From IMG/VR virus record IMGVR_UViG_3300030673_000004, positions 62,001 to 126,000 of that record: 64,000 nt of DNA; one strand, 5' to 3'. The position numbers were made by a program, and so were the translations under genes. The notes beneath the pieces were generated by a model. The model was given only the letters and a program-made list of their open reading frames with translations, was not told the origin of the DNA and made no database searches. Of the stretch, positions 20,449 through 35,724 are shown in pieces; positions within the stretch are counted from its first letter, which is position 1; every line of letters begins with the position of its first letter.

Positions 20449-21525
20449 ATGCGAACGATGCCGTTCACCATAGTTACATGCTTCTATAAACTGTTTCAGG
20501 ATGCAGGTATCCGAGAAACTGTCAGAAACGAAGTAGCACGAGCTATTATACGTGGATGTGTCCGCATAAAATCCTATAGAGATCAGCGCAAAGCTATCAA
20601 AAACTTGATAGGTGACACTAGCGAACATCAAGTATATATAAAAGTTCAAGAACTCAAGCACTGCTATGAGATGCAGGTGCTTCTATGGAGAGCACTTTAC
20701 TGTTACATTGATACACAAGATATCTCCAAAGCAGCCTACCTATACCAGATGTCTCTGGCCGATCTAACTTGGGTCATACAACTACTATCAGAAACGCACG
20801 AGTTACAGCAAATACCCGATGTAGCACCAGCACACTGGACAACAACCCCAATAACACAACAAGATGTCTACGACATTGTACAGCACAGACGGGTACAAAG
20901 TACAATCCAAGGTCTACTACGCTACTCCAAAAGCGGTGTTGTTTGGGCGTTTGATCAAGGTATAACTAAAGAAGACTTAAAAGCGGATTTAGAATATAAG
21001 GCTATTGCTACTATACTTAGATATGAAGCAAGTCGCAGAGCAAAATGGCATCTCATAAATGTAGTTGTAATTTCTATGGGAAATGAACTAAACAACAAAA
21101 CACGTAAGTCTACATCGTTAGAATCCGGAAGAATTGTTGAAGAAACAGTAGCTGGGCCAAAAGAAAATGAACCCCAGCACACCCATGCGGCAGCTATGCA
21201 ACGCATAGTATCATTGGTTAGTACAAATGATGAAGGTGATGAATTTGAAATATCACGTGTGCCGTCAGATAATGATTTTGCAAGCCTAAGAAAAGTAACA
21301 GACATTATTGAGTGCATGAAAGAATCCCTCAATAAGCGCATACTTGACTACTTAGACGTAACAGTACTCGGAACACATAATGAACCATTTGAAACGTGGA
21401 TTGAACAGCAAGAAATAGAACATAAGCACCAACTAACTGATGATGCTATTGTCAAAAAAGCACGACAATTCTTCAAACTGACAGCTAAAGATATCAAACT
21501 AATGCAAGAGGCCCTAGTTGTCTGA
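20449..21525 (+). CDS. Hypothetical protein; weak sigma-factor region-2-like segment
   Basis: 358-aa ORF, first gene of the divergent unit; EDLKADLEYKAIATILRYE loosely resembles sigma region 2. Function is weak inference. Confidence 0.6.
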   Translation: MRTMPFTIVTCFYKLFQDAGIRETVRNEVARAIIRGCVRIKSYRDQRKAIKNLIGDTSEHQVYIKVQELKHCYEMQVLLWRALYCYIDTQDISKAAYLYQMSLADLTWVIQLLSETHELQQIPDVAPAHWTTTPITQQDVYDIVQHRRVQSTIQGLLRYSKSGVVWAFDQGITKEDLKADLEYKAIATILRYEASRRAKWHLINVVVISMGNELNNKTRKSTSLESGRIVEETVAGPKENEPQHTHAAAMQRIVSLVSTNDEGDEFEISRVPSDNDFASLRKVTDIIECMKESLNKRILDYLDVTVLGTHNEPFETWIEQQEIEHKHQLTDDAIVKKARQFFKLTAKDIKLMQEALVV

Positions 21526-23017
21526 GATACCTGTTACAGATGCTCCCATTCACCAAGTACTCAATGCCCTTAACCGTATTGAAGCAGAAAAGCATAGAAC
21601 TAAAAAAATTGAAATTTTACAAGAGCTCAAAGATAATCAAATAGCTCAGTGGATGTTCTATATAGACAGTCCTGTTAATAGACACTTTGGTATTAAAGTG
21701 TCTACAGAGGCTACACGACTATACTCAGGAACAGCTAAACCCGACGAAATGCTGACAAGGTTTGAGCAGTTTCAACAAATACTTGAAAAATTACTACAAT
21801 TAAAAATCACAAAACAAGATGCACTAGAACAGCTAGAACATTTATTAGAATCCTGCTCATACACAGAGCTATTCCGTGAAGGTGTTTGGTACACCCGTTT
21901 AATAAACAACGGACTCAGATTGGGCCTGCCTACATCAGCAGTAACAGAATGCTGGCCAGACCTCAAAATCACATCAACACTACCATACGCTCGATCTATA
22001 CTTGATACAACAGGATCTGTATCCGAGCACAAAAGAAAACAAATACAATATCCTTGCGTAGCAGAGCCTATTGTTGGTGGCATCCTCGCATCTGTAATCG
22101 TAGTTAACAGCAATTCATATGTTACAGCATTTGGAAGCCGTAAAATACCATGTTTGCAGCCATGGGCAGACACACTTGCTAGTTTTCTTATGGACGCACC
22201 ACCACTTGTAATTAATGGTGAGTTTATTACAAAAAAAGCATATGATGGGCTATCACGAACAAAACAACGAGAGCGCGTAATACAGCTATGCAAAACAAGT
22301 ATTTTTAATCAAGATGATAATACAGATCAGGCTAAGCAAGAACTCGTATTTATAATCTATGATATATTTACACTAGTATCTCTTCATACAGGTATGTTCA
22401 CACTACCCTATGGGCATGCTAAGGAGTCTTCCTTTTGCCGCTCTACAATACTATCAGCTTTAGCAAAAAAAGCTAGCCACCTAGACGTAACAATTAGATG
22501 TGTACATCAAATACTATGTTTTAACTTTGACGACTTAGAAGAAGCTCATAGGTTTTATTTAACACAAGGCTTCGCAGGAAGCATAATAAAGCCCTGTAAG
22601 GCACCCATAGTATTTAGACCATCTGAGTGCTTATTCAAATGGAAAGAAACAAAAAAGCAGATAGGATATATATTATCTATCTTCCACATCAAAGAAACTA
22701 TAGGAATTGAAGTTTTTGTACCCGATACAGGAATGACAGAACATCTGTACATACCGAATAAAGATGTGCGTGACTGGTTTCAAGAACACAAAAATAACCT
22801 AAACGGATACGCAGTTGAATTTAAGGCCACATCCACAGAAGGTACAGCAAAACTATGTGTACTAACTAAGTTAGTAGCTACACAAGAACCACTATCAGAT
22901 GTGCAAATTGCTGCCTTGAGTGAACGCTTCGGGATAGCACTAAATAGTGCAGAACAAATGTCCTTAAAGCAGTTTCAGACAGCGGCATATGACCTAACAG
23001 AGGAAGATAATGTCTAA
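21518..23017 (+). CDS. T4-type ATP-dependent DNA ligase homolog lacking the catalytic Lys (pseudoenzyme)
   Basis: N-terminus LNRIEAEKHRTKKIEILQELKDN; motif I reads AEPIVGG (not KxDG); INGEF, IIYDIF, GFAGSIIK, LFKWK. Confidence 0.85.
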   Translation: MSEIPVTDAPIHQVLNALNRIEAEKHRTKKIEILQELKDNQIAQWMFYIDSPVNRHFGIKVSTEATRLYSGTAKPDEMLTRFEQFQQILEKLLQLKITKQDALEQLEHLLESCSYTELFREGVWYTRLINNGLRLGLPTSAVTECWPDLKITSTLPYARSILDTTGSVSEHKRKQIQYPCVAEPIVGGILASVIVVNSNSYVTAFGSRKIPCLQPWADTLASFLMDAPPLVINGEFITKKAYDGLSRTKQRERVIQLCKTSIFNQDDNTDQAKQELVFIIYDIFTLVSLHTGMFTLPYGHAKESSFCRSTILSALAKKASHLDVTIRCVHQILCFNFDDLEEAHRFYLTQGFAGSIIKPCKAPIVFRPSECLFKWKETKKQIGYILSIFHIKETIGIEVFVPDTGMTEHLYIPNKDVRDWFQEHKNNLNGYAVEFKATSTEGTAKLCVLTKLVATQEPLSDVQIAALSERFGIALNSAEQMSLKQFQTAAYDLTEEDNV

Positions 23018-24485
23018 ATCATATCTAGAATACGTAAGTGAAGCTATTGAGGCATATAAAAACAAAGATGCAAAGACATTAGCTGCCTGTAAGCAATTAG
23101 CATTTACAGCACGAAGGTACCAAAAACAGAATAGCCAAAGCACAGATACAGTACTTAATCTCTACCCAATACTAGGTATTCATCAGTTAACAGAACTCAC
23201 TTGTAAGTATGAAGTCACATCAATTGAACAGTTCTATCAAGCCGTTCAGTCATATCAGCTAACAGATGTTATCGCTACAAATGCCTTGTGGCAGTGGCGT
23301 GCAGCGAAACAACGAATCCTGCGCACTAGCACCACAAATATTGTTGAACACATCAAACGTACACTCGCCAGAGTAGGCATAAAAACAACTGTAGTAGGGG
23401 AGTTCTCTAGACACAAGGATACAATAGCTAATCTAGAGTTTTGTATTGAAGTAGGATCACAAGATGAAATACTTTTAGCAAAAGCTACACTACAACAAGA
23501 ATTGCTAGCTGAAACTAAAATTACAGATATAGGTCTGAGTATAGATCTCAAAACAGACATATTTGATATTAACTGTTTCCTATATTTTGGAACACATCAA
23601 AATTTCTGCACGTGTTCAATATATCATATTGGACCTAAATGTTTTATTGATAAATTAAATCATAAGCTAGTTAGTCGTGGCTATGAATTAACAAGCACAG
23701 GATTACAAACACTAGAAGGCTTGCAAGTACCGTGTAGGTCGGAGAAGACTATATGGGATATAGTTGGATCTACCATACCCCCAACATCAGCACGTGATAG
23801 TATTGATGACATCATGTATGATACTACAAATCTCGTAACATATAAAACGAGTACAGGTGACACAGGAATAACCTATAGAGCAAAAGACTCAGCAAAAATA
23901 AAGCATTGCTTAGAAAATAAGAGTTTAACGCATGTAGCACTTATTATACAAGAGAATTCCTTAGATGCAGTAACACAAGCTATAGACCAGATACACATAC
24001 TAGTCAAAGATAGTGCTATTCCTGTCTATACAGGACTACTAGTAACATCAAACACACTAGAACATCTAAGTCTTGCAGCTAAAGTAGATTTTCTTATCAT
24101 AGAAGATGATGAAATCAATGCTCTATACAAAATAACACTACCCAAAGCAAGAAAGGTAGCTAAAAACATTATCATACGAAATCCCTTCATGTTCTCCCAA
24201 GGGATGTGTCTGACCAACTCATCTTTCCCAAAAGATGAAATTCTTACTATTCTAAACAAAAACAAAATAGCTATTGAGATAACAGGTAACTGCAACTACG
24301 CAGGAACGCCTGTTGACGCATGGAAAGACGTAATACAGACAAGGTGCGCTATAACCATAGGTTCGGCACAGTACGCAAAACAACAAACACAAAGCATAGT
24401 CTCAGCTAGAATAAAGTGCTGTCAAGCTCTCATAAGCCAACAACGTTTAATGGATGCGGCAGCCTTTGAAGAGTGGCTTAGGTAA
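23010..24485 (+). CDS. DNA polymerase X-PHP homolog with degenerate active sites
   Basis: VVGEFSRHKDTIANLEF (DxD changed to NLE), YHIGPKCF, GYELTSTGL, SEKTIW...IPPTSARD; PHP-like C-half lacks the HxH metal motif. Confidence 0.82.
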   Translation: MSKSYLEYVSEAIEAYKNKDAKTLAACKQLAFTARRYQKQNSQSTDTVLNLYPILGIHQLTELTCKYEVTSIEQFYQAVQSYQLTDVIATNALWQWRAAKQRILRTSTTNIVEHIKRTLARVGIKTTVVGEFSRHKDTIANLEFCIEVGSQDEILLAKATLQQELLAETKITDIGLSIDLKTDIFDINCFLYFGTHQNFCTCSIYHIGPKCFIDKLNHKLVSRGYELTSTGLQTLEGLQVPCRSEKTIWDIVGSTIPPTSARDSIDDIMYDTTNLVTYKTSTGDTGITYRAKDSAKIKHCLENKSLTHVALIIQENSLDAVTQAIDQIHILVKDSAIPVYTGLLVTSNTLEHLSLAAKVDFLIIEDDEINALYKITLPKARKVAKNIIIRNPFMFSQGMCLTNSSFPKDEILTILNKNKIAIEITGNCNYAGTPVDAWKDVIQTRCAITIGSAQYAKQQTQSIVSARIKCCQALISQQRLMDAAAFEEWLR

Positions 24486-24517
24486 AATAGACTACACCTC
24501 CTATCAGGAGGTGTCTT

Positions 24518-24907
24518 ATGGACTTAGAATCTGAGCTGCAACAGAAAAAGAGTAGTTTAATACGCATTGGAGTAATCGGTGTTATCCTGGTAGTACTGGG
24601 TGCTGTTATAGGACGAACATCCGCGCCTCTTGAAGGAGTTTATAGCTCCAAATGGGCACGAACCATAGACAGCTTAAAAGTTGTCAATGAACAACAGAAA
24701 AAACTTGCAGATACGGCTAAGATCCGCATTGACTCCCTACAGATCATTCTAAAAAAACAAAAAGAGCTAACTGCTAGCTTGTATGCCGATGTAGTTAATG
24801 CTAAGTCAAATAGGACAGTAGAACATAACAAAGTCCTTGTACTAAATGATGCAGATCTCATTGCTAAATTTCAAGATGAGATAAGCAAAGTTAAACAAGG
24901 ACACTAA
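24518..24907 (+). CDS. N-terminal TM plus coiled-coil protein (i-spanin-like)
   Basis: RIGVIGVILVVLGAVIG transmembrane helix followed by a long helical Lys/Gln-rich region. Confidence 0.5.
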   Translation: MDLESELQQKKSSLIRIGVIGVILVVLGAVIGRTSAPLEGVYSSKWARTIDSLKVVNEQQKKLADTAKIRIDSLQIILKKQKELTASLYADVVNAKSNRTVEHNKVLVLNDADLIAKFQDEISKVKQGH

Positions 24908-25551
24908 TGGGTGCTCCACACAAACGTGAGGGCCATACTGTTAAAAAGTATGAAAATGGCCGTTTCACATGTGAAATCTGTGGTAGAAACTATAGCCTTA
25001 CAGCTTTAGATGAGCACCACAAAATACCCCAAGAGATTGGTGGCCCCAACACAGATGACAACATAGCATCTCTCTGTGATGGCTGCCACCAGACATTACA
25101 TCGCATTGCATTTGATCTAGTGTCTCTTAGCAAAAAGAAACGCTCCGCCCAAGAAGAAGCCACAGATTACTTAACAGCGCTTGAAGTATCTGATGTAGGA
25201 ACAAGTACAGCAAAATTACTTGAGTTTGCTGTTTACCTAGCGCAAGCTAAGACACTAAAAAAAGATAAGTCATTAGCTGTTCCTGATGGCGATGTAACTA
25301 TTGAACTACCTCAAAGGTACAAAGCCTTACTCATACAAGCAGGTAGAGAAGTCAAAGATGGTGCAGGAAAACGACTAGGTATGAAGGGCATAGTCACACT
25401 GGCAGCACTAGACTATCTAAAAAAGAGGCATCCCGAGCTTAAAGCTGAAATAGAAAAATACATATTTGATGGAATTATCTATGCACAACGCTCTAAAGTA
25501 GACATAGAACAAACTGCAAACAAATATCAGTTTGAAGTACAAAACCTTTAG
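24907..25551 (+). CDS. HNH endonuclease domain protein
   Basis: CEICG...LDEHHKIPQEIGGPNTDDNIASLCDGCH. Confidence 0.85.
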   Translation: MGAPHKREGHTVKKYENGRFTCEICGRNYSLTALDEHHKIPQEIGGPNTDDNIASLCDGCHQTLHRIAFDLVSLSKKKRSAQEEATDYLTALEVSDVGTSTAKLLEFAVYLAQAKTLKKDKSLAVPDGDVTIELPQRYKALLIQAGREVKDGAGKRLGMKGIVTLAALDYLKKRHPELKAEIEKYIFDGIIYAQRSKVDIEQTANKYQFEVQNL

Positions 25552-25735: not shown

Positions 25736-26386
25736 GTGAGTCGCTTTGAAGAAACTCTTGATGCGGAGCAGCTAAAAGAACTAGATCGCCGCTCAGGGAG
25801 GCTTGTGGCCGCTCTGACACCTGTTGCGAACAGTGGCTGGATCTCCAATATGAGACCATCACAAGCGATCCTGTGCTGCATAGGTTCAGGACCGTGGCGA
25901 ATTGAGCGACGAACGCTTATAGAAAAAGGCGCTTTAGATATTTTAGGTAAAAATGACCTAGTAGAAAAATCTATAGAGCTAGATGCATATTTTCCATTAG
26001 AGTGGCAAAAATATTTAGTACAAGACATTGTTCTATATACAGTAAGTACAAAATACCATAAATTTGATACTCTTGTACAGTATCAGCCGTCTAGGGATGC
26101 GTTACGGGACTTAGAAAATGCTCTCAATAAAGACCTGTACAACTTTCCTAAAGTCATATGTATGTTTGTTCGTGATTACTTAGAGTTACCCATAGTTCCA
26201 CGAGATAGACATGTCAACGCTAAACTAAAAGAGTACGGGATACCTCAAAACACACGTTTAGTCACAGAATCTCTTATCCGCATAGTCAATACTATGTCTG
26301 TGAACTCTTATGCTAGAGCTTTGTTTGAAGAAAAGAGTAGTAATCCTCAACATCTTTTGATAGAAGATCATCCTCTTTACTCTTAG
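25736..26386 (+). CDS. HhH-type DNA glycosylase-like protein
   Basis: FPKVICMF...IVPRDRHV resembles the HhH/PVDxHV signature of EndoIII/Ogg families. Confidence 0.5.
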   Translation: MSRFEETLDAEQLKELDRRSGRLVAALTPVANSGWISNMRPSQAILCCIGSGPWRIERRTLIEKGALDILGKNDLVEKSIELDAYFPLEWQKYLVQDIVLYTVSTKYHKFDTLVQYQPSRDALRDLENALNKDLYNFPKVICMFVRDYLELPIVPRDRHVNAKLKEYGIPQNTRLVTESLIRIVNTMSVNSYARALFEEKSSNPQHLLIEDHPLYS

Positions 26387-26917
26387 TAGTTCTTAGTTAC
26401 TCTTTACAGTAATCTTAACTACTTATATTTACTTACATATGCTGGAAGGGTTTGTTAGATTCAAGGAGATTGATGCGCCTCCCCAAACCCCTCCATAACT
26501 TTCCTTGCCCAGAGATGGCTAAAAGCTCAACTCTGTAAGTAATAATTAAGGATGGTAAGGTGGCGCATCGCTCTGCCCTCAGATCTAACAAGCCTTCCGG
26601 ATATGCCGTATAGGGCTTGCTGAGTTCTTAGGCTAACCCACCCGCCTCCCGCCGTTAGATCGGCATGTACCCAAGACTTTTTCAAGTCGCCGCAAGCTTC
26701 TGAGAAGTCCTTTGCGTGTAGAGGTGCCTGTAGTTTCCTACAGAGGGGTGTTGTATCACCCCAGATAGTGATCCGTAGGCCATCTACGGCAGCAGACAGG
26801 GCTCGTCCCTGTTGGTGGGTTCCAGTGTCTCCCACGCGGCTGTTAAGAATTTACAGCAATCATTTCCAAAATCTCGGGCTTCTTCAATTTTTTTTATTTT
26901 ACATGTAAATCTATAAG
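26374..26917. other. Candidate bidirectional replication origin
   Basis: Non-coding gap where the plus strand switches from A/C-rich to T/G-rich; AT-rich periodic tract at 26374-26440. Confidence 0.6.
26624..26646 (+). repeat. 23-bp direct repeat, copy 1
   Basis: GTTCTTAGGCTAACCCACCCGCC, identical to 28184-28206. Confidence 0.95.
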
Positions 26918-27898
26918 ATGAAAACAGTAAAAGCTCTTACACGAAATACACAACTAACTCATGATTTTGACGTGTCTTTTCATGGACCCGATGCGACCTT
27001 ATCTTGTGAGTCTGGAGGCTTTGAAGATAATACTTCATTGGTACTGTTTTTGTTTCTGCTCTTGCGTGATCATTTGCCCTCCGGTGTTGTTGAGGAACTT
27101 GTGCGTGAGAGCAGCGTTGCTCCTGAGGCTGGTGTGCGTTACAGTAATGCGTACTTAGCCCAGTACGCTACTAACTTAGCATTACGTCTATTGTGTATAG
27201 ATGTACCTGAAGTTACACCTATTTTTGATGGTGTTAAGATAACAGAATGGTTGAATCAGAACCAGATAAGCATCATTAATAGATTTCATCGTCATCAGCC
27301 GAAGGGATTGGAGCTGTGTCCAAAAGCTGTTGATGGCTCTGGTTGGGCTTTAGTTACATTTTCTTCTGCTCATCTTAGTTTCCCTTTTCCCTGCGTGCTT
27401 GTTGGTCGGAACTATATTTTAGTACCATCTGGGACTACTAATCTTCGCATTGAGTGGGACAGCGCTTCTAGTTTATGGACTCTTTGGAACCCTACAACTG
27501 AAGATACTCATGTACAAGAGAAACATAAAATCAACTATGTGCTGAAACCTAATAACACGCAAGATGAGTGTCGTCAGTTAAGTAATTTGTTAGGTGTTGC
27601 TGTTGATAGACTATCCTCTATGAGGATTTTAGATGCTCGTGGTTGTAGCATTCCTCGTGTTATACGGCTAGATTTATCAACAGGTGCTGCCTTAGTTGGA
27701 ATTTCTGCGTTTCCTGAAAGTAAGGCCGATCATCCTAAACCTACTACGGATGTTCCTGGCTGCACAGATGCTGTCCTGGGTACTTTATTAGAAGCACATG
27801 TTAATCTTTCTGGGTGCTTTTTGCACTTCCCTCAATATGAGCCCTCATGGGAGCCTATTGCTGATATAGTTATTCCTTTATGTACATCTGCAGGTTGA
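26918..27898 (+). CDS. Hypothetical protein
   Basis: 326-aa ORF between the two direct repeats. Confidence 0.7.
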   Translation: MKTVKALTRNTQLTHDFDVSFHGPDATLSCESGGFEDNTSLVLFLFLLLRDHLPSGVVEELVRESSVAPEAGVRYSNAYLAQYATNLALRLLCIDVPEVTPIFDGVKITEWLNQNQISIINRFHRHQPKGLELCPKAVDGSGWALVTFSSAHLSFPFPCVLVGRNYILVPSGTTNLRIEWDSASSLWTLWNPTTEDTHVQEKHKINYVLKPNNTQDECRQLSNLLGVAVDRLSSMRILDARGCSIPRVIRLDLSTGAALVGISAFPESKADHPKPTTDVPGCTDAVLGTLLEAHVNLSGCFLHFPQYEPSWEPIADIVIPLCTSAG

Positions 27899-28117: not shown

Positions 28118-28183
28118 ATAAAATTGATGTCTAACAAGTGGTGTAGCTGACACAACCGAGATACACGCATCTCATACATGTGG

Positions 28184-28206
28184 GTTCTTAGGCTAACCCA
28201 CCCGCC
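28184..28206 (+). repeat. 23-bp direct repeat, copy 2
   Basis: GTTCTTAGGCTAACCCACCCGCC. Confidence 0.95.
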
Positions 28207-29532: not shown

Positions 29533-29606
29533 TGGGGTATAGCTCAGTAGGTAGTAGCTCCGTGCTGTTAACACGGTGGTCAAAGGTTCGAGTCCTTTTA
29601 CCCCAG
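29533..29606 (+). tRNA. tRNA-Asn(GTT)
   Basis: TGGGGTA/TACCCCA acceptor; CCGTG-CTGTTAA-CACGG; AAAGG-TTCGAGT-CCTTT. Confidence 0.92.
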
Positions 29607-29659
29607 CTATCGAACTTTAGTTTTAGTTCGTGGTCAAACTTTGTATAAATCTGGTAAAA

Positions 29660-29720
29660 CGGGAAGGTAGGACGCTGGGTCTGAAAACCCTGGGTATCAG
29701 TTCGATTCTGATAGTGTGCT
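29660..29720 (+). pseudogene. Degenerate tRNA-Phe(GAA) fragment
   Basis: GGGT-CTGAAA-ACCC arm and ATCAG-TTCGATT-CTGAT T-arm; no pairable D-arm or acceptor 5' strand. Confidence 0.45.
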
Positions 29721-29723
29721 TTT

Positions 29724-29877
29724 GTTCTTCCGCTGAAATGGACACTAAGCGGACGTGGTGCTGGGACCTTTAAGTTACAGGTAATGCTGGGCGGCGGTCA
29801 AAATCGGACAGAACCTTGTAGGTTGTATTGGGTCGCTCCCTATACAGCAAGTGGACTGGGCACCGCAGCGGAGGAAC
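29724..29877 (+). ncRNA. Unassigned structured RNA (~154 nt)
   Basis: 12-bp closing helix GTTCTTCCGCTG/CAGCGGAGGAAC; internal GGTGC/GCACC and a 29822-29848 hairpin. Confidence 0.55.
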
Positions 29878-29886
29878 TTTGTTGCT

Positions 29887-29960
29887 GGTCCTATCGTCTA
29901 ATTGGTTAGGACACCACCCTCTCACGGTGGGAGTGTGGAGTTCAAGTCTCCCTAGGACTA
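29887..29960 (+). tRNA. tRNA-Glu(CTC)
   Basis: GGTCCTA/TAGGACT; CCACC-CTCTCAC-GGTGG. Confidence 0.92.
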
Positions 29961-30187
29961 TAAATAAGTGTAGTTTTGCATTAAGCAGACTTTGAAATAA
30001 GAGTGCTTAATGTTTAGCTGCATGAAGTCCGGTAGTCGCCCTGAGTAGCCAGCGGAGACGTTGACCTTTGGGTGAAGCTGAAATAATTGCTTCCTACCGG
30101 CATTTTGCTTTGCTTATATGTACAATGTAATAACGCTATACATATAAGTGAATTGTGACTAGTTCTTCGTTAGGAGAATCCTCACAA

Positions 30188-30263
30188 GCCGCGCATTAGT
30201 CTAAATGGTAAAGACATTCCGGAATCATTCCGGAAAATGTTGGTTCGAATCCAGCACGTGGCA
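30188..30263 (+). ncRNA. Atypical tRNA-like RNA with TCA at the tip of a palindromic anticodon arm
   Basis: D-arm GTCT/AGAC, T-arm GTTGG-TTCGAAT-CCAGC, acceptor with a 2-nt bulge; anticodon arm TTCCGGAA-TCA-TTCCGGAA. Confidence 0.7.
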
Positions 30264-30264
30264 T

Positions 30265-30360
30265 GATGGGATAGCTCAATTGGTAGAGCGGCTCGCCCCC
30301 TTTAGGGATCGGGTGTGAAGGAGACTTCGTCGGTTGATGGTTCGAATCCATCGCTCATCT
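30265..30360 (+). ncRNA. Atypical tRNA-like RNA with expanded anticodon region and long variable arm
   Basis: GATGGGA..TAGCTCAATTGGTAGAGC; GCTCG[CCCCCTTTAGGGAT]CGGGT; variable arm GTGAAG-GAGA-CTTCGT; GATGG-TTCGAAT-CCATC. Confidence 0.7.
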
Positions 30361-30793
30361 ATCTGTATAATAAGTAGTTGCGAACTTATTATTGTGCGCT
30401 TGAGCACTAGCCTGTATAAGGTTTTCTTTATACAGAAAGCAGAGCAACTTGGGAGTAGCCAAGTTATATTAACCTACTCGCAATCATGATCAAGATTAAA
30501 TAGAATCCGTTCTTGCTCGGGGCATATTGCAGACCGCCCATAGGTTTCAGACGTTATTGAAAATCTATGAATGTTTCTGCTAGACAATAAGCATTTCATA
30601 TGGAGACTCTATGTCCCTGCACGCATGCATCTAGTTAGCGCTTGCTCTGCTTGCACGATATACAGAACAGTTGATATATGTGAATGCTGAGTTGCTGTTT
30701 CCTGTGTAAATAGGTTACAGTTTGGTAGCATTTTGTGAAAGCAACTTACTACCACGAGGATGATACAGGTAATCTCGTAAAAACTGTATCAAT

Positions 30794-30866
30794 GCCAGTG
30801 TAGCTCAGTTGGTAGAGCAGTTGCTTTGTAAGCATCAGGTCGCGAGTCCAAGTCTCGCCGCTGGCT
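30794..30866 (+). tRNA. tRNA-Thr(TGT)
   Basis: GCCAGTG/CGCTGGC; loop TTTGTAA. Confidence 0.92.
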
Positions 30867-30867
30867 C

Positions 30868-30996
30868 TTGTTCCTTGCTGTTAAGAATGAAGTTCATCTT
30901 ACCTAAAACAAGATATTTTGGATTCGAATCCAAAATACGCTTAACCGCGTATGGCTTTGGTGCCAATTTCTTCATTTTGCTTGTTTGCAGGAACAA
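30868..30996 (+). ncRNA. Y-RNA-like element 1 (degenerate tRNA-mimic domain)
   Basis: TTGTTCCT/AGGAACAA stem; TGCTGTT...TTGTTTGC signature; inner hairpins in T-AS-D order (TTTTGGA-TTCGAA-TCCAAAA, TACGC/GCGTA, GGC-TTTGGT-GCC). Confidence 0.7.
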
Positions 30997-31001
30997 ACTT
31001 T

Positions 31002-31074
31002 TCAGTCATGCTGTTCTGACATCAGGTTCATCCTTTTAAGATATTTTCCCGATGTTGATTTGTTTGCTGACTGA
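31002..31074 (+). ncRNA. Y-RNA-like element 2 (minimal, 73 nt)
   Basis: TCAGTCA/TGACTGA stem; TGCTGTT...TTGTTTGC; GGTTCATC motif; no tRNA domain. Confidence 0.7.
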
Positions 31075-31087
31075 TTTACTGTAGAAA

Positions 31088-31227
31088 GGTCAGTGCTGTT
31101 AGAGATCGGTTACTTCCAATTTCAAGGACGAGGTCACAGGTTCGAGTCCTGTTCCTGGCTTTTAATGCCGGGATAGCTCAGTTGGTTAGAGCGCGTAAAC
31201 TATCCGGTTTCGTTTGTTTGCCTGACT
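31088..31227 (+). ncRNA. Y-RNA-like element 3 (YrlA-type, full tRNA-mimic domain)
   Basis: GTCAG/CTGAC stem and signature; T-arm ACAGG-TTCGAGT-CCTGT precedes acceptor TCCTGGC-loop-GCCGGGA, then D-arm GCTC-AGTTGGTTA-GAGC. Confidence 0.85.
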
Positions 31228-31232
31228 GTTAA

Positions 31233-31305
31233 TGGCCCTTAGCTCATCTGGTAGAGCGCTACTCTGATATGGTAGAGGTGCTTGGTTCGAGTCCAAGAGG
31301 GCCAA
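31233..31305 (+). tRNA. tRNA-Ile(GAT)
   Basis: TGGCCCT/AGGGCCA; CTACT-CTGATAT-GGTAG. Confidence 0.92.
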
Positions 31306-31311
31306 TTCTTT

Positions 31312-31377
31312 ATACTTGCTGTTAGTCTTCAGATACATCTTTGGCTTGTAAAACCTGAAGACAGTTGTTTGCAGTAT
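31312..31377 (+). ncRNA. Y-RNA-like element 4 (minimal, 66 nt)
   Basis: ATACT/AGTAT stem; TGCTGTT...TTGTTTGC; GTCTTCAG/CTGAAGAC; GATACATC motif. Confidence 0.7.
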
Positions 31378-31385
31378 GAAGATAT

Positions 31386-31457
31386 GCACGAGTAGGTCAG
31401 TGGTAGACCACCTGCTTGCCAAGTAGGATGTCGTGGGTCCGAAACCCATCTCGTGCT
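31386..31457 (+). tRNA. tRNA-Gly(GCC)
   Basis: GCACGAG/CTCGTGC, U73; loop TTGCCAA. Confidence 0.92.
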
Positions 31458-31581
31458 TAGATGCGTAAATGAAATATGTCAACAAATGCTTCTATCATAT
31501 CTAGTAATCCGTGTATTCCATCTGGAGTTTATCCTGTGAAATCACCATCACCAGCCACACCTCCGAAGCATACATAAAAGT

Positions 31582-31706
31582 CCTATCTCAGTATAACCTT
31601 ACGAGCTAGCTGCCCTTGTTAGTGATAATAAGGAAGGTCAGGTCAAAGTCCTGGAGCGCCCCCGTTAGGCACAATAAGGAGCTTACGGTAACGGTACTGA
31701 GATAGG
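31582..31706 (+). ncRNA. Unassigned rod/multibranch RNA (125 nt)
   Basis: Perfect 12-bp helix CCTATCTCAGTA/TACTGAGATAGG enclosing further helices and CAGG-TCAAAGT-CCTG. Confidence 0.55.
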
Positions 31707-31710
31707 CAAT

Positions 31711-31782
31711 GCACCAGTAATTCAGTGGTAGAATCTCTGCCTTCCAAGCAGTTGGTCCCCAGTTCGATCCTGGGTTGGTGCT
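31711..31782 (+). tRNA. tRNA-Gly(TCC)
   Basis: GCACCAG/TTGGTGC, U73; loop CTTCCAA. Confidence 0.92.
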
Positions 31783-31966
31783 TTTGTTCATGGTGATGCT
31801 TGAGCAATAAATAGTATACTTTCATCACAGAGTATAATATAAATCTCCCGTGCATAAGAAGATGCGGAAATTCGGATAACGCAGCTTATGTGCTAACGGA
31901 CACTGGTGTTGATCGCACCCTGTTAGGGAGTTTTTGATCAGTACGTTTTCAGATCAAAACATTATT

Positions 31967-32050
31967 GGGTTGGATTGTAGTACGGCTACTACAGATGGAC
32001 TGTAAATCCATTGCCTTTCGGCTTTGCCTGTTCGAATCCGGAGCAACCCA
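31967..32050 (+). tRNA. tRNA-Tyr(GTA), imperfect T-stem
   Basis: ATGGA-CTGTAAA-TCCAT; variable arm GCC-TTTC-GGC; GGGTTG/CAACCC acceptor. Confidence 0.8.
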
Positions 32051-32089
32051 CTTCATTTTTCATAATCACCATTGTTAAGGGAGTTACTT

Positions 32090-33478
32090 ATGCCTACCAT
32101 CGTTGAGAATGCTCACGGTGTTCGGGCTTACGAATTTGGAGATGAAGTGTCTCTTCGTAGGCTTGTTCTTGCGTCCTTGCTGACTGAAGATTCTTCAGAC
32201 ATGCAAAAGCAAATCGCTGACTTGGTGCCTCGTGTAAGTCCTACGTCTGTGATGAATCTGGCGATCACAGCTCGTAAGGATTATGCGCTACGCAAGGTTC
32301 CCTTGTTTTTGGTTCGTGAGATGTCTCGCTATGAAAACCATCGTCCCTATGTAGCAGATACTCTAGCTCAAGTTATTGAGCGTGCTGATGAGATGAGCAC
32401 TTTTCTATCCATGTATTGGGCAGGAAAGAATGTAGGCGAGGGGCGTGAGCCTCTTGCTAGGCAGGTTAAGCTTGGGTTGGGGCGTGCTTTTGGGAAGTTC
32501 AATGCTTTCTCTTTGGCTCGTTATGATCGTAATAGTGCTGCATTTTCCATGCAGGATGTTATTAGGATCGCGCATCCTCGACCTGAGTCTCCTGAGCAGG
32601 AAGTACTCTTTCGACAGATTGCTAAGGGTGAAGCTCTTCCTCCTGTAAAGGATTGGGAACACGAGCTATCTCAGTCAAAGGACAAGAAGGCTTCATGGGT
32701 TTCTCTTTTGGAGAACAAGCAGCTTGGTGGCCTTGCTCTGTTGAAGAACTTGCGTAACATGCTGCAAGCCGGTGTCTCTCAAAGTTTGATTGTCTCAACT
32801 ATTGCTCAGCATCCGTTCAAGTATGTTTTGCCCTTTCGGTTCATCTCTGCTCTTCGTGAGCTTGTGCTATCTGATGTAGTTGTCTCTAACGAACTGCGGG
32901 ATGCTTTAGAACAAGCAATGTTTCGCGGTTTGGTGGATTTTCCTAAGCTTGACGGAGATACCGTGTTCCTTGTTGATGTGTCTGGGTCTATGAGTCATCC
33001 TCTTGGGATGTCTTTCTCAGATCGGCACGGTAGGACTCATGCTAGCTCTATGACTCGATCTGATGGCGCTGCTGCTTTGACTATGATGCTGAATGAAATT
33101 TGTGATGTACCTCACATCTTTAAGTTTCATACGCGAATCATTCCAATTTCCGGGTCTCGCGGTTTTGCTCTAGGGTCTCAAGTTAACTATGCGCGGCAAA
33201 ACACACGTCTGGGTGACTGCTTAAAGCAGGCTCAGCATGAGATGTTGGTTAAGGGAATCACTCCTAAGCGTTTGATTGTTTTAACGGATGAGGAGTCTCA
33301 GGATCCTGTTGGGGAAGGATTCGCTCAGTATAACTACATGATCAACGTGAAGTCGGCTTCTTACAGTATTGCTTATAAGTCATGGATCCGCATGACTGGC
33401 TTTAGTGAGCATATTGTTAAGCTGCTTGTTGGGCATGAGCGGTTAGATAAGTATGTTAAGGAACATGTAGCATTGTGA
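32090..33478 (+). CDS. rsr: Ro60/Rsr TROVE-vWA RNA-binding protein
   Basis: LRRLVLASLL, LRKVPLFLVREM, VIERADEM, KFNAFSLARYDR, WEHELS, LALLKNLRNM, VLPFRFISA, VDVSGSM (MIDAS), LIVLTDEESQD; ATG with an AAGGGAG RBS. Confidence 0.93.
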   Translation: MPTIVENAHGVRAYEFGDEVSLRRLVLASLLTEDSSDMQKQIADLVPRVSPTSVMNLAITARKDYALRKVPLFLVREMSRYENHRPYVADTLAQVIERADEMSTFLSMYWAGKNVGEGREPLARQVKLGLGRAFGKFNAFSLARYDRNSAAFSMQDVIRIAHPRPESPEQEVLFRQIAKGEALPPVKDWEHELSQSKDKKASWVSLLENKQLGGLALLKNLRNMLQAGVSQSLIVSTIAQHPFKYVLPFRFISALRELVLSDVVVSNELRDALEQAMFRGLVDFPKLDGDTVFLVDVSGSMSHPLGMSFSDRHGRTHASSMTRSDGAAALTMMLNEICDVPHIFKFHTRIIPISGSRGFALGSQVNYARQNTRLGDCLKQAQHEMLVKGITPKRLIVLTDEESQDPVGEGFAQYNYMINVKSASYSIAYKSWIRMTGFSEHIVKLLVGHERLDKYVKEHVAL

Positions 33479-33529
33479 ATTTCTGCCTGCAGTGCCTTGA
33501 GGGGAGGGTATTGTGGGTAGATTTTGTTC

Positions 33530-33603
33530 GGGCGAGTAGCTCAGATGGCTAGAGCAGTTGGTTCTTAACCAACGGGTCGTGGGTTCGAGTCCCACCTCGC
33601 CCA
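33530..33603 (+). tRNA. tRNA-Lys(CTT)
   Basis: GGGCGAG/CTCGCCC; GTTGG-TTCTTAA-CCAAC. Confidence 0.93.
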
Positions 33604-33606
33604 TAG

Positions 33607-33750
33607 CTTGAATACATGCTGTTTGACTTCGGATACATCAACTAGATGGTCGCAGGTTCGAATCCTGTTAAGGCTTTGAAAGAAGCTTTATAGCTCAGTT
33701 GGTAGAGCACCAAGCTAAATTTCCGATTTCTTTTGTTTGCTGTATTTGAG
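33607..33750 (+). ncRNA. Y-RNA-like element 5 (YrlA-type, full tRNA-mimic domain)
   Basis: AATACA/TGTATT stem and signature; GCAGG-TTCGAAT-CCTGT, then TAAGGCTTT-GAAA-GAAGCTTTA, then GCTC-AGTTGGTA-GAGC. Confidence 0.85.
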
Positions 33751-33755
33751 TTTTT

Positions 33756-33819
33756 GGGGATGTCGTCTAGTGGTCTAGTTTTCATGGTGGCTACTTGAGT
33801 TCGAATCTCAGCCTCCCTA
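33756..33819 (+). pseudogene. tRNA-Glu(TTC)-like pseudogene with internal deletion
   Basis: GGGGATGTCGTCTAGTGGTCTAG joins directly to TTTTCATGGTGG; the D-stem 3' strand and anticodon-stem 5' strand are missing; T-arm intact. Confidence 0.7.
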
Positions 33820-33832
33820 TTACTTAGATCTG

Positions 33833-33861
33833 TTGACACAAATCTTTGACTGTTGTATATT
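33833..33861 (+). promoter_or_regulatory. sigma70 promoter
   Basis: TTGACA-17-TG.TATATT. Confidence 0.75.
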
Positions 33862-33872
33862 TGGTTGTGTTA

Positions 33873-33957
33873 GCCCAGATGGTGGAACTAGGTAGACACT
33901 GGGGTCTTAAAAACCCTTGACTGTAATGTCGTGCGGGTTCAAATCCCGCTTTGGGCA
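33873..33957 (+). tRNA. tRNA-Leu(TAA)
   Basis: GCCCAGA/TTTGGGC A73; loop CTTAAAA; long variable arm. Confidence 0.92.
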
Positions 33958-34028
33958 CTTTATATAATGTGGTGCATTGCCCTCTAGGCGTGGTTACTAG
34001 GCTAAGTTGCGGGCATCTCAGAAGACAC

Positions 34029-34057
34029 TTGACATCCATGCAATAGTATAGTATATT
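34029..34057 (+). promoter_or_regulatory. sigma70 promoter
   Basis: TTGACA-17-TATATT upstream of a tRNA and tmRNA. Confidence 0.75.
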
Positions 34058-34066
34058 TGTTTTACT

Positions 34067-34137
34067 GGGGCTATAGGCTAGGGGTAAACCTGCGCGTCTG
34101 CAACGCGCCTTCCCCGGTTCGATTCCGGGTGGCTCCA
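34067..34137 (+). tRNA. tRNA-Ala(TGC) with C33, or Cys(GCA) anticodon on an Ala acceptor (ambiguous)
   Basis: Acceptor GGGGCTA/TGGCTCC-A gives G3-U70 and A73; arm GCGCG-TCTGCAA-CGCGC, alternative register CTGCAAC. Confidence 0.7.
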
Positions 34138-34159
34138 CTTCTTTGATATCTTTGAATTC

Positions 34160-34512
34160 GGGGGTGTATTGGTTTCGACAGATTCTGTGAGAATGATAGC
34201 GCGTGTCGAGGGTCCAGGTGGCCTCGTAAAAACCTGGAAAAAGTCAAACGGCGAAGAGATCTACTCTTACGCTCTGGCTGTCTGAGAAATCAGATACCAG
34301 AACCTTGCAATGAGATGCTGTTGTAGTTGCTTGGTATAATCTAGACGGCTGGGTTACAGTAATGTTTGTAGTCTGTAACTAAGAAAATCAAACTACGGTG
34401 TGTATGAGTCTGTTCTTCGACGCATGCGCAGTTAAGATCAAAAGAAGAACTACACACGTAGTGTTTTCATTTAAGTAGTTTTTGGACGCGGGTTCGAGTC
34501 CCGCCACCTCCA
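34160..34512 (+). ncRNA. ssrA: tmRNA; tag (A)GEEIYSYALAV at 34250-34285
   Basis: GGGGGTG TATTGGTTTCGAC 5' end; GACGCGGGTTCGAGTCCCGCCACCTCCA 3' end with G3-U; internal tag ORF ending ALAV-stop. Confidence 0.95.
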
Positions 34513-34545
34513 TTGTGTAAATGAGATCTATTTAAGGAGATCTCT

Positions 34546-34878
34546 ATGTCGGATGTAGTAAAAGATTTGTTACCTGATGAATATAACAGGGTACTTTCTT
34601 CAAATTCTGTGTCTGTAGTTGATTTTTGGGCTTCATGGTGTGGTCCGTGTACCGCGTTAGCTCCTGTCTACGAGGATATTGCCTCGGAGTATCAGACGAA
34701 AGCTAATTTTTACAAACTTGATGCTGGAGAACATACTGCTTTCGCAAAACAATTAGGGATACGAACGATTCCTACCTTGCAATTTCTGAGTAAAGGTACT
34801 ATTGTTCAAACCCTTACAGGTGCTACTACGAAAGACGCTATCATGGCTGCTCTTTTGCAGGCACTCTCTCTCATTTAA
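34546..34878 (+). CDS. trxA: Thioredoxin
   Basis: VDFWASWCGPC, IRTIPTL; AAGGAG RBS. Confidence 0.95.
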   Translation: MSDVVKDLLPDEYNRVLSSNSVSVVDFWASWCGPCTALAPVYEDIASEYQTKANFYKLDAGEHTAFAKQLGIRTIPTLQFLSKGTIVQTLTGATTKDAIMAALLQALSLI

Positions 34879-35006
34879 CTCTGCTTTTAGCAGATATAGA
34901 CTTGCCTAGATTAGTTTCTAGACAGCATTCGAGTGAAATCGAATGGCCCATACAGGGCAAAATAGCAGCAGAACTGCTATTCACCAACTTAGAGAAAGTA
35001 GATACT

Positions 35007-35576
35007 ATGAGCACCAAGATTGCTCTTGCAAATGTTCTTCGCATCGTTGCCGAGAACAAGGATTCGCTGACCAAGGAGATCCTTGCGGATGTTCTTGATG
35101 GTGTTGCTGATGGCTTGGAGTCGGATGTTACTGTTGGAATCTCGCTTCAGCGTGCTCCGCAGGCTCCTGGAACCAAGGCACCTACCGCTCCAGCTACTTC
35201 TGCTTCTGACACGGATGCCACTTCTGAAGAAGGCTATGAAGCTGTCACCGAAGGCTTCATCGAGGCTGGTGACGAGTGGAAACTTCGTGATGGTTTGACG
35301 CACACTGATGGTCGTGAGGTCACCTGGCGTGAAGTTACTGCTGACCTTGTTGGAAAGCCTGTCACTGACTTTAGCAAGTCACTCCTTCGTCGTCCTGATG
35401 AGGACGCTTTTGAGGATGTCACCGAAGGCTTCATCGAAGCTGGTGACCAGTGGAAGCTCAGTGCTGGTTTGAAGCACCGCGATGGCCGTCCCACTGTGTG
35501 GCGCACTGTGGAAGATTCTCTTGTCGGCAAGGACGTTGCCGAGTTCGAGAAGTCTCAGTTCCGTCGCAAGGCTTAA
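35007..35576 (+). CDS. Hypothetical protein with two tandem 58-aa domains
   Basis: Start re-set to MSTKIALA; repeats VTEGFIEAGD.WKL..GL.H.DGR...WR.V...LVGK.V..F.KS..RR, 174 nt apart. Confidence 0.8.
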   Translation: MSTKIALANVLRIVAENKDSLTKEILADVLDGVADGLESDVTVGISLQRAPQAPGTKAPTAPATSASDTDATSEEGYEAVTEGFIEAGDEWKLRDGLTHTDGREVTWREVTADLVGKPVTDFSKSLLRRPDEDAFEDVTEGFIEAGDQWKLSAGLKHRDGRPTVWRTVEDSLVGKDVAEFEKSQFRRKA

Positions 35577-35582
35577 GCCTCT

Positions 35583-35631
35583 TTCCCTTGTTATACTACG
35601 GGTTTTACTCTTAGTGTAGCAAGGGATTTTT
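35583..35631 (+). terminator. Probable intrinsic terminator
   Basis: TCCCTTGTTATACTA...TAGTGTAGCAAGGGA followed by TTTTT. Confidence 0.55.
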
Positions 35632-35638
35632 GTATACT

Positions 35639-35724
35639 GCCGAGGTGGTGGAATTGGTAGATCACGGTAGACTCAAAATCTACTGCCTGTAATGGGCGTG
35701 AGGGTTCAAGTCCCTCTCTCGGTA
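35639..35724 (+). tRNA. tRNA-Leu(CAA)
   Basis: GCCGAGG/TCTCGGT A; GTAGA-CTCAAAA-TCTAC; long variable arm. Confidence 0.92.

What the first reader, a model, noticed from the sequence alone, without database searches (positions are those of the whole stretch)
26374..26917. Strand-composition inversion marks a candidate bidirectional origin
Seen: the plus strand is A/C-rich to the left and T/G-rich to the right even within plus-strand genes. Hand counts: 21541-21600 has A21 C17 T13 G9; 27601-27660 has A11 C10 T24 G15. The flip therefore follows position, not transcription, and falls in a 530-nt non-coding gap. Established: G/T excess usually marks the leading strand. Inference: theta replication starts here, with most genes co-oriented outward.
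Basis: partly seen in the sequence, partly recalled or inferred. Interest (0 to 1): 0.68.

Follow-up and report, generated by a model that had tools for sequence, protein, structure and literature searches.

The report
Jumbo-phage replication origin with embedded RNA
The strand-composition flip is real and marks the most likely start point of two-way DNA replication in a 375-kb phage genome; the "empty" gap there holds a conserved, elaborately folded RNA gene of unknown family.

Summary
The window lies in a 375.5-kb circular-mapping jumbo-phage genome. The whole-genome cumulative G+T skew has its global minimum at window 26292, and a likelihood change point falls at 26288 (realistic resolution 26.0-26.9 kb). 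A second flip lies almost opposite, at genome 271.5 kb, giving arms of 183 and 192 kb. That second flip sits inside an unbroken plus-strand gene block, so the skew follows position and not transcription. Position outweighs gene strand for GC skew at third codon positions, roughly equals it for AT skew, and the skew holds in intergenic DNA. Related phages flip at the same syntenic spot. Bidirectional replication from here is therefore well supported, but only by composition. Skew-defined origins are already described for about 30% of huge phages.

Two corrections apply. Only 62% of coding DNA is co-oriented with the forks, and only 34% on one arm. The 530-nt gap is not empty. It holds a ~400-nt structured RNA (26442-26840) conserved in seven lineages, with about 50 compensatory base pairs and no Rfam match, flanked by AT-rich spacers. 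There are no DnaA boxes, no clear iterons and no recognisable initiator. The phage encodes PolA, a DnaB-like helicase and a Toprim protein. Transcript-primed initiation is my preferred mechanism, but it is unproven.

The parts
26062..26382 (.). Skew change point. The best position is 26288, and the cumulative keto-skew global minimum of the 375-kb genome is at 26292.
   Evidence: The realistic resolution is 26.0-26.9 kb.
26377..26441 (.). Left AT-rich spacer (76% A+T), pyrimidine-rich on the + strand. It is the least stable 60-nt duplex between 20 and 34 kb and carries TTTACA-type short repeats. It is the candidate unwinding or initiation site.
   Evidence: It is conserved with only small indels in the closest relatives. 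The pyrimidine bias is seen in 6 of 7 lineages and the duplex-stability rank is. The motifs are shown.
26442..26840 (.). Conserved structured RNA element of about 400 nt, with domain 1 at 26442-26600 and domain 2 at 26605-26840. The strand is unresolved, with the minus strand slightly favoured.
   Evidence: Folding z-scores are -5.1 and -6.5. It is about 93% identical where the flanks are 78%. There are 7 lineages. There are 48-51 pairs with compensatory double changes against 29 +/- 3 in shuffles. There is no Rfam match.
26841..26917 (.). Right AT-rich spacer (73% A+T overall, up to 85% locally, with a T8 run). It contains a conserved TA(A/T)AT(C/T) hexamer next to the RNA. Synteny with relatives loosens from here rightward.
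25736..26386 (+). Left neighbour of the RNA in every lineage: a 216-aa protein with an HhH-GPD DNA-glycosylase-like fold.
   Evidence: It has 8 homologues. The AlphaFold model has pLDDT 89.5. The best Foldseek hits are OGG1, EndoIII and MagIII, with TM about 0.5 and E about 0.02.
26918..27898 (+). Right neighbour: a 326-aa protein of unknown function. Its N- and C-terminal parts are shared with the 209-aa and 202-aa genes at the same place in two related lineages.
   Evidence: It has no Pfam or PHROG match. The fold model was unusable.
20449..25551 (+). A + strand block that keeps left-arm composition. It holds a ligase-like gene (21518-23017), a gene with a weak Pol beta thumb match (23010-24485) and an HNH endonuclease (24907-25551).
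28181..28206 (+). A 26-nt copy of an RNA-internal motif (GTTCTTAGGCTAACCCACCCGCC core). It is the only other match in the genome.
29533..55819 (+). An array of 34 tRNA genes plus a tmRNA (34160-34515), all co-oriented with the rightward fork and starting 2.6 kb from the switch.

Best explanation
Window 26.0-26.9 kb (genome about 88.3 kb) is the origin region of bidirectional replication of a circular-mapping 375.5-kb jumbo-phage genome. The forks meet near 271.5 kb. Shown: a strand asymmetry that follows position, with G/T excess on the presumed leading strand of both arms. Inferred: replication is the cause. The origin region is not empty. It consists of an AT-rich, strand-asymmetric spacer (26377-26441), a conserved structured RNA gene of about 400 nt (26442-26840) and a second AT-rich spacer (26841-26917). 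The mechanism I think most likely is DnaA-independent, transcription-dependent initiation. Host RNA polymerase would transcribe the RNA gene and run into an easily melted spacer. An RNA-DNA hybrid there would prime the phage's family-A polymerase. The DnaB-like helicase and the Toprim primase-like protein would then build the second fork. This is the logic of T4 oriF/oriG, the T7 primary origin and ColE1 RNA II. My probabilities are: origin at this site, about 0.8; the RNA element being a real structured RNA, about 0.95; initiation primed by or controlled through this transcript, about 0.3.
For: The global skew minimum lies here and the second flip lies 183/192 kb away. Genes run on the + strand from 82 to 370 kb, yet the skew flips at 271 kb inside that block. 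In a regression, the GC skew at third codon positions has a replichore coefficient of 0.166 against 0.055 for gene strand. For AT skew at third positions the two are equal (0.209 and 0.207). Intergenic DNA follows the replichore too. There are no exceptions in 5-kb bins. The same flip sits at the RNA in relatives L001 and L010. The junction is present in independent assemblies. The RNA is conserved above its flanks and shows strong covariation. The left spacer is the least stable duplex locally and is pyrimidine-rich on + in 6 of 7 lineages. There is no dnaA gene and no DnaA-box cluster. PolA, a DnaB-like helicase and a Toprim_2 protein are present. Two lineages carry TTGACA-N18-TATATC reading into the RNA on the minus strand (sequence shown). 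The T4 origin architecture of promoter plus AT-rich downstream unwinding element with an R-loop primer is described in PMC3016281.
Against: All evidence for origin function is compositional, with no coverage gradient and no replication assay. The RNA strand is unresolved. The minus strand is favoured by lower folding energy in 7 of 7 sequences and by wobble counts. Against that, a conserved TTTACA -35-like box and several conserved G-U pairs fit the + strand. No RNase H1 domain was found in the phage. No terminator or defined RNA 3' end was found. Large structured phage RNAs such as GOLLD and ROOL also sit near tRNA genes without any known link to replication (PMC5737381). The co-location could therefore be incidental.
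Confidence: 0.7

Rival explanations
1. The site is the origin, but the RNA has nothing to do with replication. It would be a free-standing phage non-coding RNA of the GOLLD/ROOL kind, belonging to the neighbouring block of tRNA, tmRNA and Y-RNA genes. Initiation would then use an unrecognised initiator protein that binds the short TTTAC-type repeats in the spacers.
For: The RNA lies 2.7 kb from a 34-tRNA array and 5 kb from a TROVE/Ro60-like gene. GOLLD and ROOL share the context of phage and nearby tRNA genes. TTTACA occurs three times on the + strand within the two short spacers, and a 12-mer TTTACAGYAATC flanks the RNA on both sides. A conserved protein of unknown function sits directly to the right in three lineages.
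Against: There is no Rfam match even at E up to 10. The 12-mer pair is not significant on its own, since 27 of 100 shuffles give two matches. No iteron array of three or more longer repeats was found. The right-hand gene is replaced by an unrelated minus-strand gene in three lineages. The RNA coincides with the skew flip in all three lineages that have long flanks.
Confidence: 0.45
2. The flip is not caused by replication. It would reflect two gene classes with different coding-strand composition, from expression timing or mosaic ancestry, or an old rearrangement.
For: Gene strand also contributes to the skew; the AT skew at third positions has a strand term as large as the replichore term. 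The left arm beyond 271 kb carries many very large ORFs, up to 2004 aa, which could form a distinct gene class.
Against: Intergenic DNA shows the same arm-specific skew. All four combinations of arm and strand fit an additive model with R2 of 0.56-0.90. The two flips are almost exactly opposite, at 48.8% and 51.2% of the circle. G/T-rich 8-mers are biased to the presumed leading strand in both arms, even though two thirds of left-arm coding DNA is head-on. The flip is conserved in diverged relatives.
Confidence: 0.1
3. The virion DNA is linear with fixed ends near genome 271.5 kb and replicates bidirectionally from a central internal origin, as T7 does. The second flip would then mark the physical ends and not a fork-meeting point, and the mode would not be theta.
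For: The assembly closes only through a 36-base overlap. IMG/VR classes the ends as direct terminal repeats. Nothing here shows the topology of the replicating molecule.
Against: The 271.5-kb flip lies in a tight + strand gene block with a 27-nt intergenic spacer and no long repeats. The flip there is gradual over several kb, as expected for variable fork meeting.
Confidence: 0.08

Closest known systems
Skew-defined bidirectional origins of huge phages (Al-Shayeb et al. 2020, PMC7162821)
   Same: It is a circularised phage genome above 200 kb with a bacterial-type V-shaped cumulative skew, that is, one origin and one terminus. The paper states that about 30% of such genomes show this pattern.
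   Different: Here the switch is mapped to under 1 kb and shown to be independent of gene orientation. It is conserved in relatives and occupied by a conserved structured RNA. No sequence relative was found among 50,697 deposited phage records or in IMG/VR.
Bacterial oriC (DnaA-dependent)
   Same: The skew minimum is at the origin, an AT-rich easily melted segment is present, and highly expressed RNA genes lie close by and co-oriented with the fork.
   Different: There is no dnaA gene. There is no cluster of DnaA boxes: one 1-mismatch box lies near the site and the genome-wide maximum is 3 per kb elsewhere.
Transcript-primed origins: T4 oriF/oriG (PMC3016281), T7 primary origin, ColE1 RNA II
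   Same: There is a promoter-like element, then an AT-rich unwinding segment. A family-A DNA polymerase and a DnaB-type helicase are encoded, with no dedicated initiator protein detectable. As in ColE1, a long folded RNA of several hundred nt lies directly beside the start point. The ColE1 and T7 details are from my own knowledge.
   Different: No R-loop, primer end or RNase H dependence has been shown. The strand of the RNA is unresolved. The RNA has no sequence or Rfam similarity to RNA II. T4 minimal origins are about 100 bp without a structured RNA.
GOLLD and ROOL large ornate RNAs (PMC5737381; bioRxiv 10.1101/2024.12.08.627333)
   Same: It is a large multi-junction RNA encoded by a phage, near tRNA genes, with no known function.
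   Different: It is shorter, at about 400 nt against the 581-nt average the paper gives for ROOL. No covariance-model match was found to either family. Neither family has a reported link to a skew switch.

Membership tests
Replication origin inferred from strand asymmetry (bidirectional ori/ter) | Global extremum of cumulative skew at the site | tested here: met
   The keto-skew minimum is at window 26292 and the AT-skew maximum at 26269 over 375,537 bases. The change point is at 26288.
Replication origin inferred from strand asymmetry (bidirectional ori/ter) | A second switch roughly opposite on the circle | tested here: met
   The second switch is at genome 271,460, giving arms of 183 and 192 kb.
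Replication origin inferred from strand asymmetry (bidirectional ori/ter) | Skew independent of transcription direction | tested here: met
   Four-class analysis and regression show the position effect, and intergenic DNA follows it. The + gene block spans the 271-kb flip.
Replication origin inferred from strand asymmetry (bidirectional ori/ter) | Replication demonstrably starts there (copy-number gradient, 2D gels, autonomous replication) | not testable with these tools
No wet-lab data are available.
DnaA-dependent oriC | Cluster of DnaA boxes, and a dnaA gene in the genome | tested here: not met
   There is no PF00308 match. There is no exact box within 3 kb and only one 1-mismatch box beside the gap.
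Iteron-type origin (lambda or plasmid Rep type) | Array of three or more direct repeats, plus an adjacent initiator gene | tested here: inconclusive
   No repeat family of three or more copies was found. Only short TTTAC-core repeats occur in the spacers. The neighbours are a glycosylase-like protein and a protein of unknown function.
Transcript-primed origin (T4 oriF/oriG, T7, ColE1) | Promoter directing transcription into an AT-rich unwinding element | tested here: inconclusive
   AT-rich, least-stable spacers are present. Promoter-like boxes exist on both strands: TTGACA-N18-TATATC on minus in L013 and L015, TTTACA-N16/17-TAT... on plus in the window, L001 and L010. The strand is unresolved.
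Transcript-primed origin (T4 oriF/oriG, T7, ColE1) | Persistent RNA-DNA hybrid whose 3' end primes DNA synthesis | not testable with these tools
   This needs R-loop mapping and mapping of nascent-strand ends.
Transcript-primed origin (T4 oriF/oriG, T7, ColE1) | A polymerase able to extend such a primer, and a replicative helicase, are encoded | tested here: met
   Family-A polymerase with 3'-5' exonuclease. DnaB-like helicase. Toprim_2 protein.
Structured non-coding RNA | Conserved secondary structure supported by compensatory changes, with no conserved reading frame | tested here: met
   There are 48-51 double-change pairs against 6-20 in slid controls and 29 +/- 3 in shuffled controls, with 0 of 300 shuffles reaching the observed value. 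The ORF is not conserved.
Known Rfam families (GOLLD, ROOL, RNase P, group I/II introns, tmRNA and others) | Covariance-model match | tested here: not met
   Nothing was found at the gathering threshold in the window. Only chance-level hits at E above 6 fell on the gap. Nothing fell on four diverged homologues.

The most novel reading that the evidence does not exclude
A previously undescribed, conserved and ornate RNA of about 400 nt is the working part of a jumbo-phage replication origin. Its transcript would fold and then run into the adjoining AT-rich, purine/pyrimidine-asymmetric spacer to form the primer or R-loop that starts bidirectional replication. That would be a ColE1 RNA II-like pre-primer on a 375-kb virus that lacks any recognisable initiator protein.
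Probability: 0.22. Interest if true: 0.8.

Novelty: new member of a known kind. Interest (0 to 1): 0.55.

Why it matters
How huge phages start replicating their DNA is almost unknown. Origins are usually only guessed from skew plots. Here the origin of one deep-branching lineage is narrowed to under 1 kb. It lacks the usual bacterial and plasmid signatures and coincides, in several diverged relatives, with a conserved structured RNA of no known family. That yields a short, clonable fragment for direct origin assays. It also yields a concrete, falsifiable question: is initiation RNA-primed? The genome is also a clean case in which replication-linked and transcription-linked strand bias can be separated, because about 100 kb of genes run head-on to the fork. 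If the RNA proves unrelated to replication, it is still a candidate new class of large phage RNA.

Tried and rejected
- **Rfam.** I scanned at the gathering threshold on the window, at permissive E-values on the gap, and on four diverged homologues. No family matched.
- **Group I intron idea.** I rejected it. The conserved block starts about 10 nt before the left gene's stop codon. The right-hand frame closes directly upstream of its ATG. The right-hand gene differs between relatives.
- **Protein-coding reading of the gap.** I rejected it, because the ORF at 26527-26835 is not conserved.
- **DnaA boxes, iterons and local k-mer enrichment.** Nothing convincing was found.
- **Relatives in public collections.** There were none among deposited phages. 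There were none in IMG/VR by two proteins. The JGI metagenome scan returned only the same genome.
- **DNA motif scans.** My first degenerate pattern had a wrong gap length: N{3,5} where the window's own sequence needs 6. The one hit, in an Acidobacteria MAG contig, is at chance level and nhmmer finds no RNA there. The corrected pattern matches all seven lineages and finds nothing more in IMG/VR.
- **Right-hand neighbour protein.** The AlphaFold model was unusable at pLDDT 41. The ESM Atlas gave no lead. PHROGs and Pfam were blank.
- **Strand of the RNA.** Energy, wobble counts and promoter reading were all tried and do not agree well enough to decide.
- **Covariance model.** I did not build one, because the alignment exceeds the 400-column limit and only session-held sequence could have been searched.
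- **Replication genes.** No T7-like RNA polymerase, PolB, Pol III alpha or RNase H1 domain was found in the genome. The control for the T7-like RNA polymerase family rang nowhere, so that absence is weak.

Full report
**What the window is.** The window is bases 62001-126000 of a single-contig virus record of 375,537 bases. Its first and last 36 bases are identical, which is the usual sign of a circular assembly. IMG/VR classes the ends as direct terminal repeats and rates the record 100% complete. The window carries 34 tRNA genes and a tmRNA gene. The genome encodes a family-A DNA polymerase interrupted by an intein with an HNH domain, a DnaB-like helicase and a Toprim_2 protein. The polymerase is only 25-31% identical to those of jumbo phages such as Pseudomonas phage Lu11 and Erwinia phage Yoloswag. 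No deposited phage matches at the DNA level. This is therefore a deep-branching jumbo phage known only from metagenomes.

**Checking the observation.** In the window the + strand has AT skew of about +0.2 and GC skew at or below 0 up to about 26 kb. It has AT skew of about -0.1 and GC skew of about +0.1 from 27 kb on. Gene orientation changes at 20.3-20.4 kb, but the + strand genes at 20449-26386 keep the left-hand composition.

**The whole-genome test.**
- Cumulative G+T-A-C has its global minimum at window 26292.
- Cumulative AT skew has its maximum at window 26269.
- Cumulative GC skew has a broad minimum at window 24444.

I then trained base frequencies by codon position and gene strand on each arm, away from the switches. 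The likelihood change point falls at 26288, with 2-log-unit support of 26062-26320. With the RNA masked, placing the switch at 26386, 26441 or 26917 costs 6-9 log units. Local composition is not stationary, so I take the honest resolution to be 26.0-26.9 kb. That range contains the reported gap.

**Position or transcription.** A simple ORF map shows genes on the + strand almost without interruption from 82 kb to 370 kb. The skew nevertheless flips a second time at genome 271,460, between two tightly packed + strand genes.

I split ORFs by arm and by strand. All values are read on the + strand, at third codon positions:

| Arm | Gene strand | Keto skew |
|---|---|---|
| Right | + | +0.29 |
| Right | - | +0.03 |
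| Left | + | -0.09 |
| Left | - | -0.39 |

- In a regression, the replichore term is 0.166 against 0.055 for strand in the GC skew at third positions.
- For the AT skew at third positions the two terms are equal, 0.209 and 0.207.
- Intergenic DNA follows the arm: GC/AT skew is +0.06/-0.10 on the right arm, and -0.09/+0.16 and -0.02/+0.10 on the two parts of the left arm.
- In 5-kb bins the genome reads left state for 0-90 kb, right state for 90-270 kb and left state for 270-375 kb, with no exception.
- The arms are 183 and 192 kb.
- G/T-rich 8-mers of the form TGNTGCTG are six- to twenty-fold biased to the presumed leading strand in both arms.

This is the pattern expected of bidirectional replication from one origin to an opposite terminus. 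Transcription alone cannot produce it.

Only 62% of coding DNA is co-oriented with the forks. The figure is 92% on the right arm and only 34% on the left arm.

**Artefact or inversion.** The same junction is present, letter for letter, in other assemblies of 375,030, 375,610 and 375,756 bases. In a relative that is about 78% identical in DNA (L001) the local skew minimum lies at 9336, with the RNA at 9510-9920. In a more distant relative (L010) the AT maximum is at 10626 and the keto minimum at 11160, with the RNA at 10777-11201. Shorter contigs of still more distant lineages mostly show the same sign change but are too short to weigh. The terminus region shows no long repeats and no sign of physical ends. 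The flip there is gradual over several kb.

**What is in the gap.** The 531 bases between the stop codon at 26386 and the ATG at 26918 are not plain spacer. The central ~400 nt fold far better than shuffled sequence on either strand, with z-scores of -5.1 and -6.5. I searched with the neighbouring proteins and fetched the contigs that encode their homologues. This gave the same element next to the same left-hand gene in seven distinct lineages.

- Between the window and L001 the element is about 93% identical, while the flanking genes are about 78% identical in DNA. The right-hand gene is largely replaced.
- An alignment of eight sequences gives a consensus fold with about 115 pairs. Of these, 48-51 keep pairing through changes on both sides.
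- Controls give 6-20 such pairs when partners are slid by 1-3 columns and 29 +/- 3 when partners are shuffled. None of 300 shuffles reaches the observed value.
- The 102-aa ORF on the minus strand is not conserved.
- The fold has two domains, closed by helices 26442-26600 and 26605-26840.
- No Rfam family matches the window copy or four diverged copies, even at permissive thresholds.
- A profile search finds no second copy in the genome, apart from a 26-nt motif at 28181-28206.
- The corrected motif scan finds nothing further in IMG/VR.

**The strand of the RNA is not settled.** The evidence points both ways.
- For the minus strand: it folds more stably in all seven lineages. It gives the better consensus energy, -202.7 against -186.8. 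Among pairs predicted on both strands, 32 are A-C and 16 are G-U when read on the + strand. Two lineages carry a strong TTGACA-N18-TATATC promoter reading into the element on the minus strand.
- For the + strand: a TTTACA box with a TAT-rich hexamer 16-17 nt downstream is conserved on the left side in the window, L001 and L010. Several G-U pairs are conserved on the + strand.

**The spacers.** The left spacer (26377-26441) is 76% A+T and is the least stable 60-nt duplex between 20 and 34 kb. It is 61-68% pyrimidine on the + strand in six of seven lineages, against 45-47% in the adjacent coding DNA. The right spacer (26841-26917) is 73% A+T overall and reaches 85% locally, with a T8 run. The skew change point sits at the left spacer's outer edge.

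**Classical origin signatures are missing.** There is no dnaA gene. There is no DnaA-box cluster and no iteron array. Neither neighbour looks like an initiator.
- The left one, 25736-26386, models with pLDDT 89.5 as an HhH-GPD glycosylase-like fold. Its best matches are OGG1, EndoIII and MagIII, at TM about 0.5 and E about 0.02. It belongs with the adjacent ligase-like gene and the gene with a weak Pol beta thumb match in what looks like a repair module.
- The right one remains unexplained.

**Mechanism.** I commit to the site being the origin, with probability about 0.8. For how it fires, the most economical reading of the anatomy is transcription-dependent, initiator-free initiation of the kind known from T4 oriF/oriG. 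There, a promoter is followed by an AT-rich downstream unwinding element in which the transcript forms a persistent R-loop that primes the leading strand (PMC3016281). The T7 primary origin and ColE1 work on the same logic; that comparison is from my own knowledge. The supporting anatomy here is a folded RNA gene, an easily melted strand-asymmetric spacer at the switch, no initiator signature, and a replisome of PolA, DnaB-like helicase and Toprim protein. The length and folding of the RNA recall the ColE1 RNA II pre-primer.

None of this is shown. I give about 0.3 to the RNA transcript being primer or regulator. I give about 0.45 to the RNA being an unrelated phage RNA that merely lies beside the origin at the head of the tRNA block, as GOLLD and ROOL lie near tRNA genes (PMC5737381).

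**Novelty.** Skew patterns of bidirectional replication are reported for about 30% of huge phage genomes (PMC7162821). The core finding is therefore a new member of a known kind. Three things are new here: the sub-kilobase localisation, the clean separation from transcription, and the conserved RNA of no known family at the switch.

**Limits.**
- My first two collection scans used a faulty pattern, so nothing can be said about bacterial genomes.
- The host is unknown.

Noticed in passing
window 32072-33478 and 31128-31198: There is a TROVE-domain (Ro60-like) protein gene (Pfam E 1e-11). A sub-threshold YrlA (Y RNA-like) match lies 0.9 kb upstream, next to tRNA-Ile. Together they suggest a phage-encoded Ro/Y-RNA pair. 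The TROVE gene is conserved in the relatives.
   Followed up: partly
window 27900-29530: This 1.6 kb has no convincing protein gene, and the listed minus-strand ORFs look spurious. It has two strong sigma-70-like + strand promoters (about 28270-28298 and 28536-28565) and palindromic hairpins built on CTCACGCTTGCGTGAG. It also has a weak RAGATH-33 match at 29159-29246. Part of it is conserved at about 76% in L001. It may hold further unrecognised small RNAs.
   Followed up: no
window 30265-30360: This is a 96-nt tRNA-like gene for which ARAGORN gives no normal anticodon ('tt' at position 38), with a low Rfam tRNA score of 36.8 bits. It may be an intron-containing or otherwise unusual tRNA.
   Followed up: no
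L010 13286-18309: A related phage lineage carries a Cas3-like HD/helicase gene, a Cas7fv-like gene and a gene with a CRISPR_assoc (PF08798) domain, about 2 kb to the right of its copy of the RNA. The window's phage has other genes at that place.
   Followed up: no
window 24907-25551: The 214-aa HNH endonuclease is 99.5% identical between the window's phage and the L001 lineage. Its neighbours are 72-91% identical. This suggests recent transfer of a mobile homing-type gene.
   Followed up: no
G000:C1:39046-42447 (L022, outside the window): The family-A DNA polymerase ORF (1133 aa) is interrupted by an intein splicing domain with an HNH_3 endonuclease at residues 590-769.
   Followed up: partly
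whole genome (G000): The 8-mers TGTTGCTG, TGATGCTG, TGGTGCTG and GTTTGCTG are 6- to 30-fold more frequent on the presumed leading strand in both arms. My rough estimate from the G/T excess alone is about 3-fold. They could be polar motifs of a Chi or KOPS kind.
   Followed up: no
G000:C1:270465-270507 (L023 4466-4507): A perfect-register tandem pair of a 21-nt unit (CTCTTGTTGCGTTCAAGGGGA, 95% identical) lies about 1 kb before the terminus-side skew flip. Its meaning is unknown.
   Followed up: no
G000:C1:271000-370000: About 100 kb of + strand genes, including ORFs of 1000-2004 aa, run head-on to the inferred leftward fork. This is an unusually large head-on fraction.
   Followed up: partly
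window 14661-20280: Three adjacent minus-strand genes of 759, 441 and 675 aa carry Amidoligase_2 matches, one of them weak. They are conserved in the relatives.
   Followed up: no
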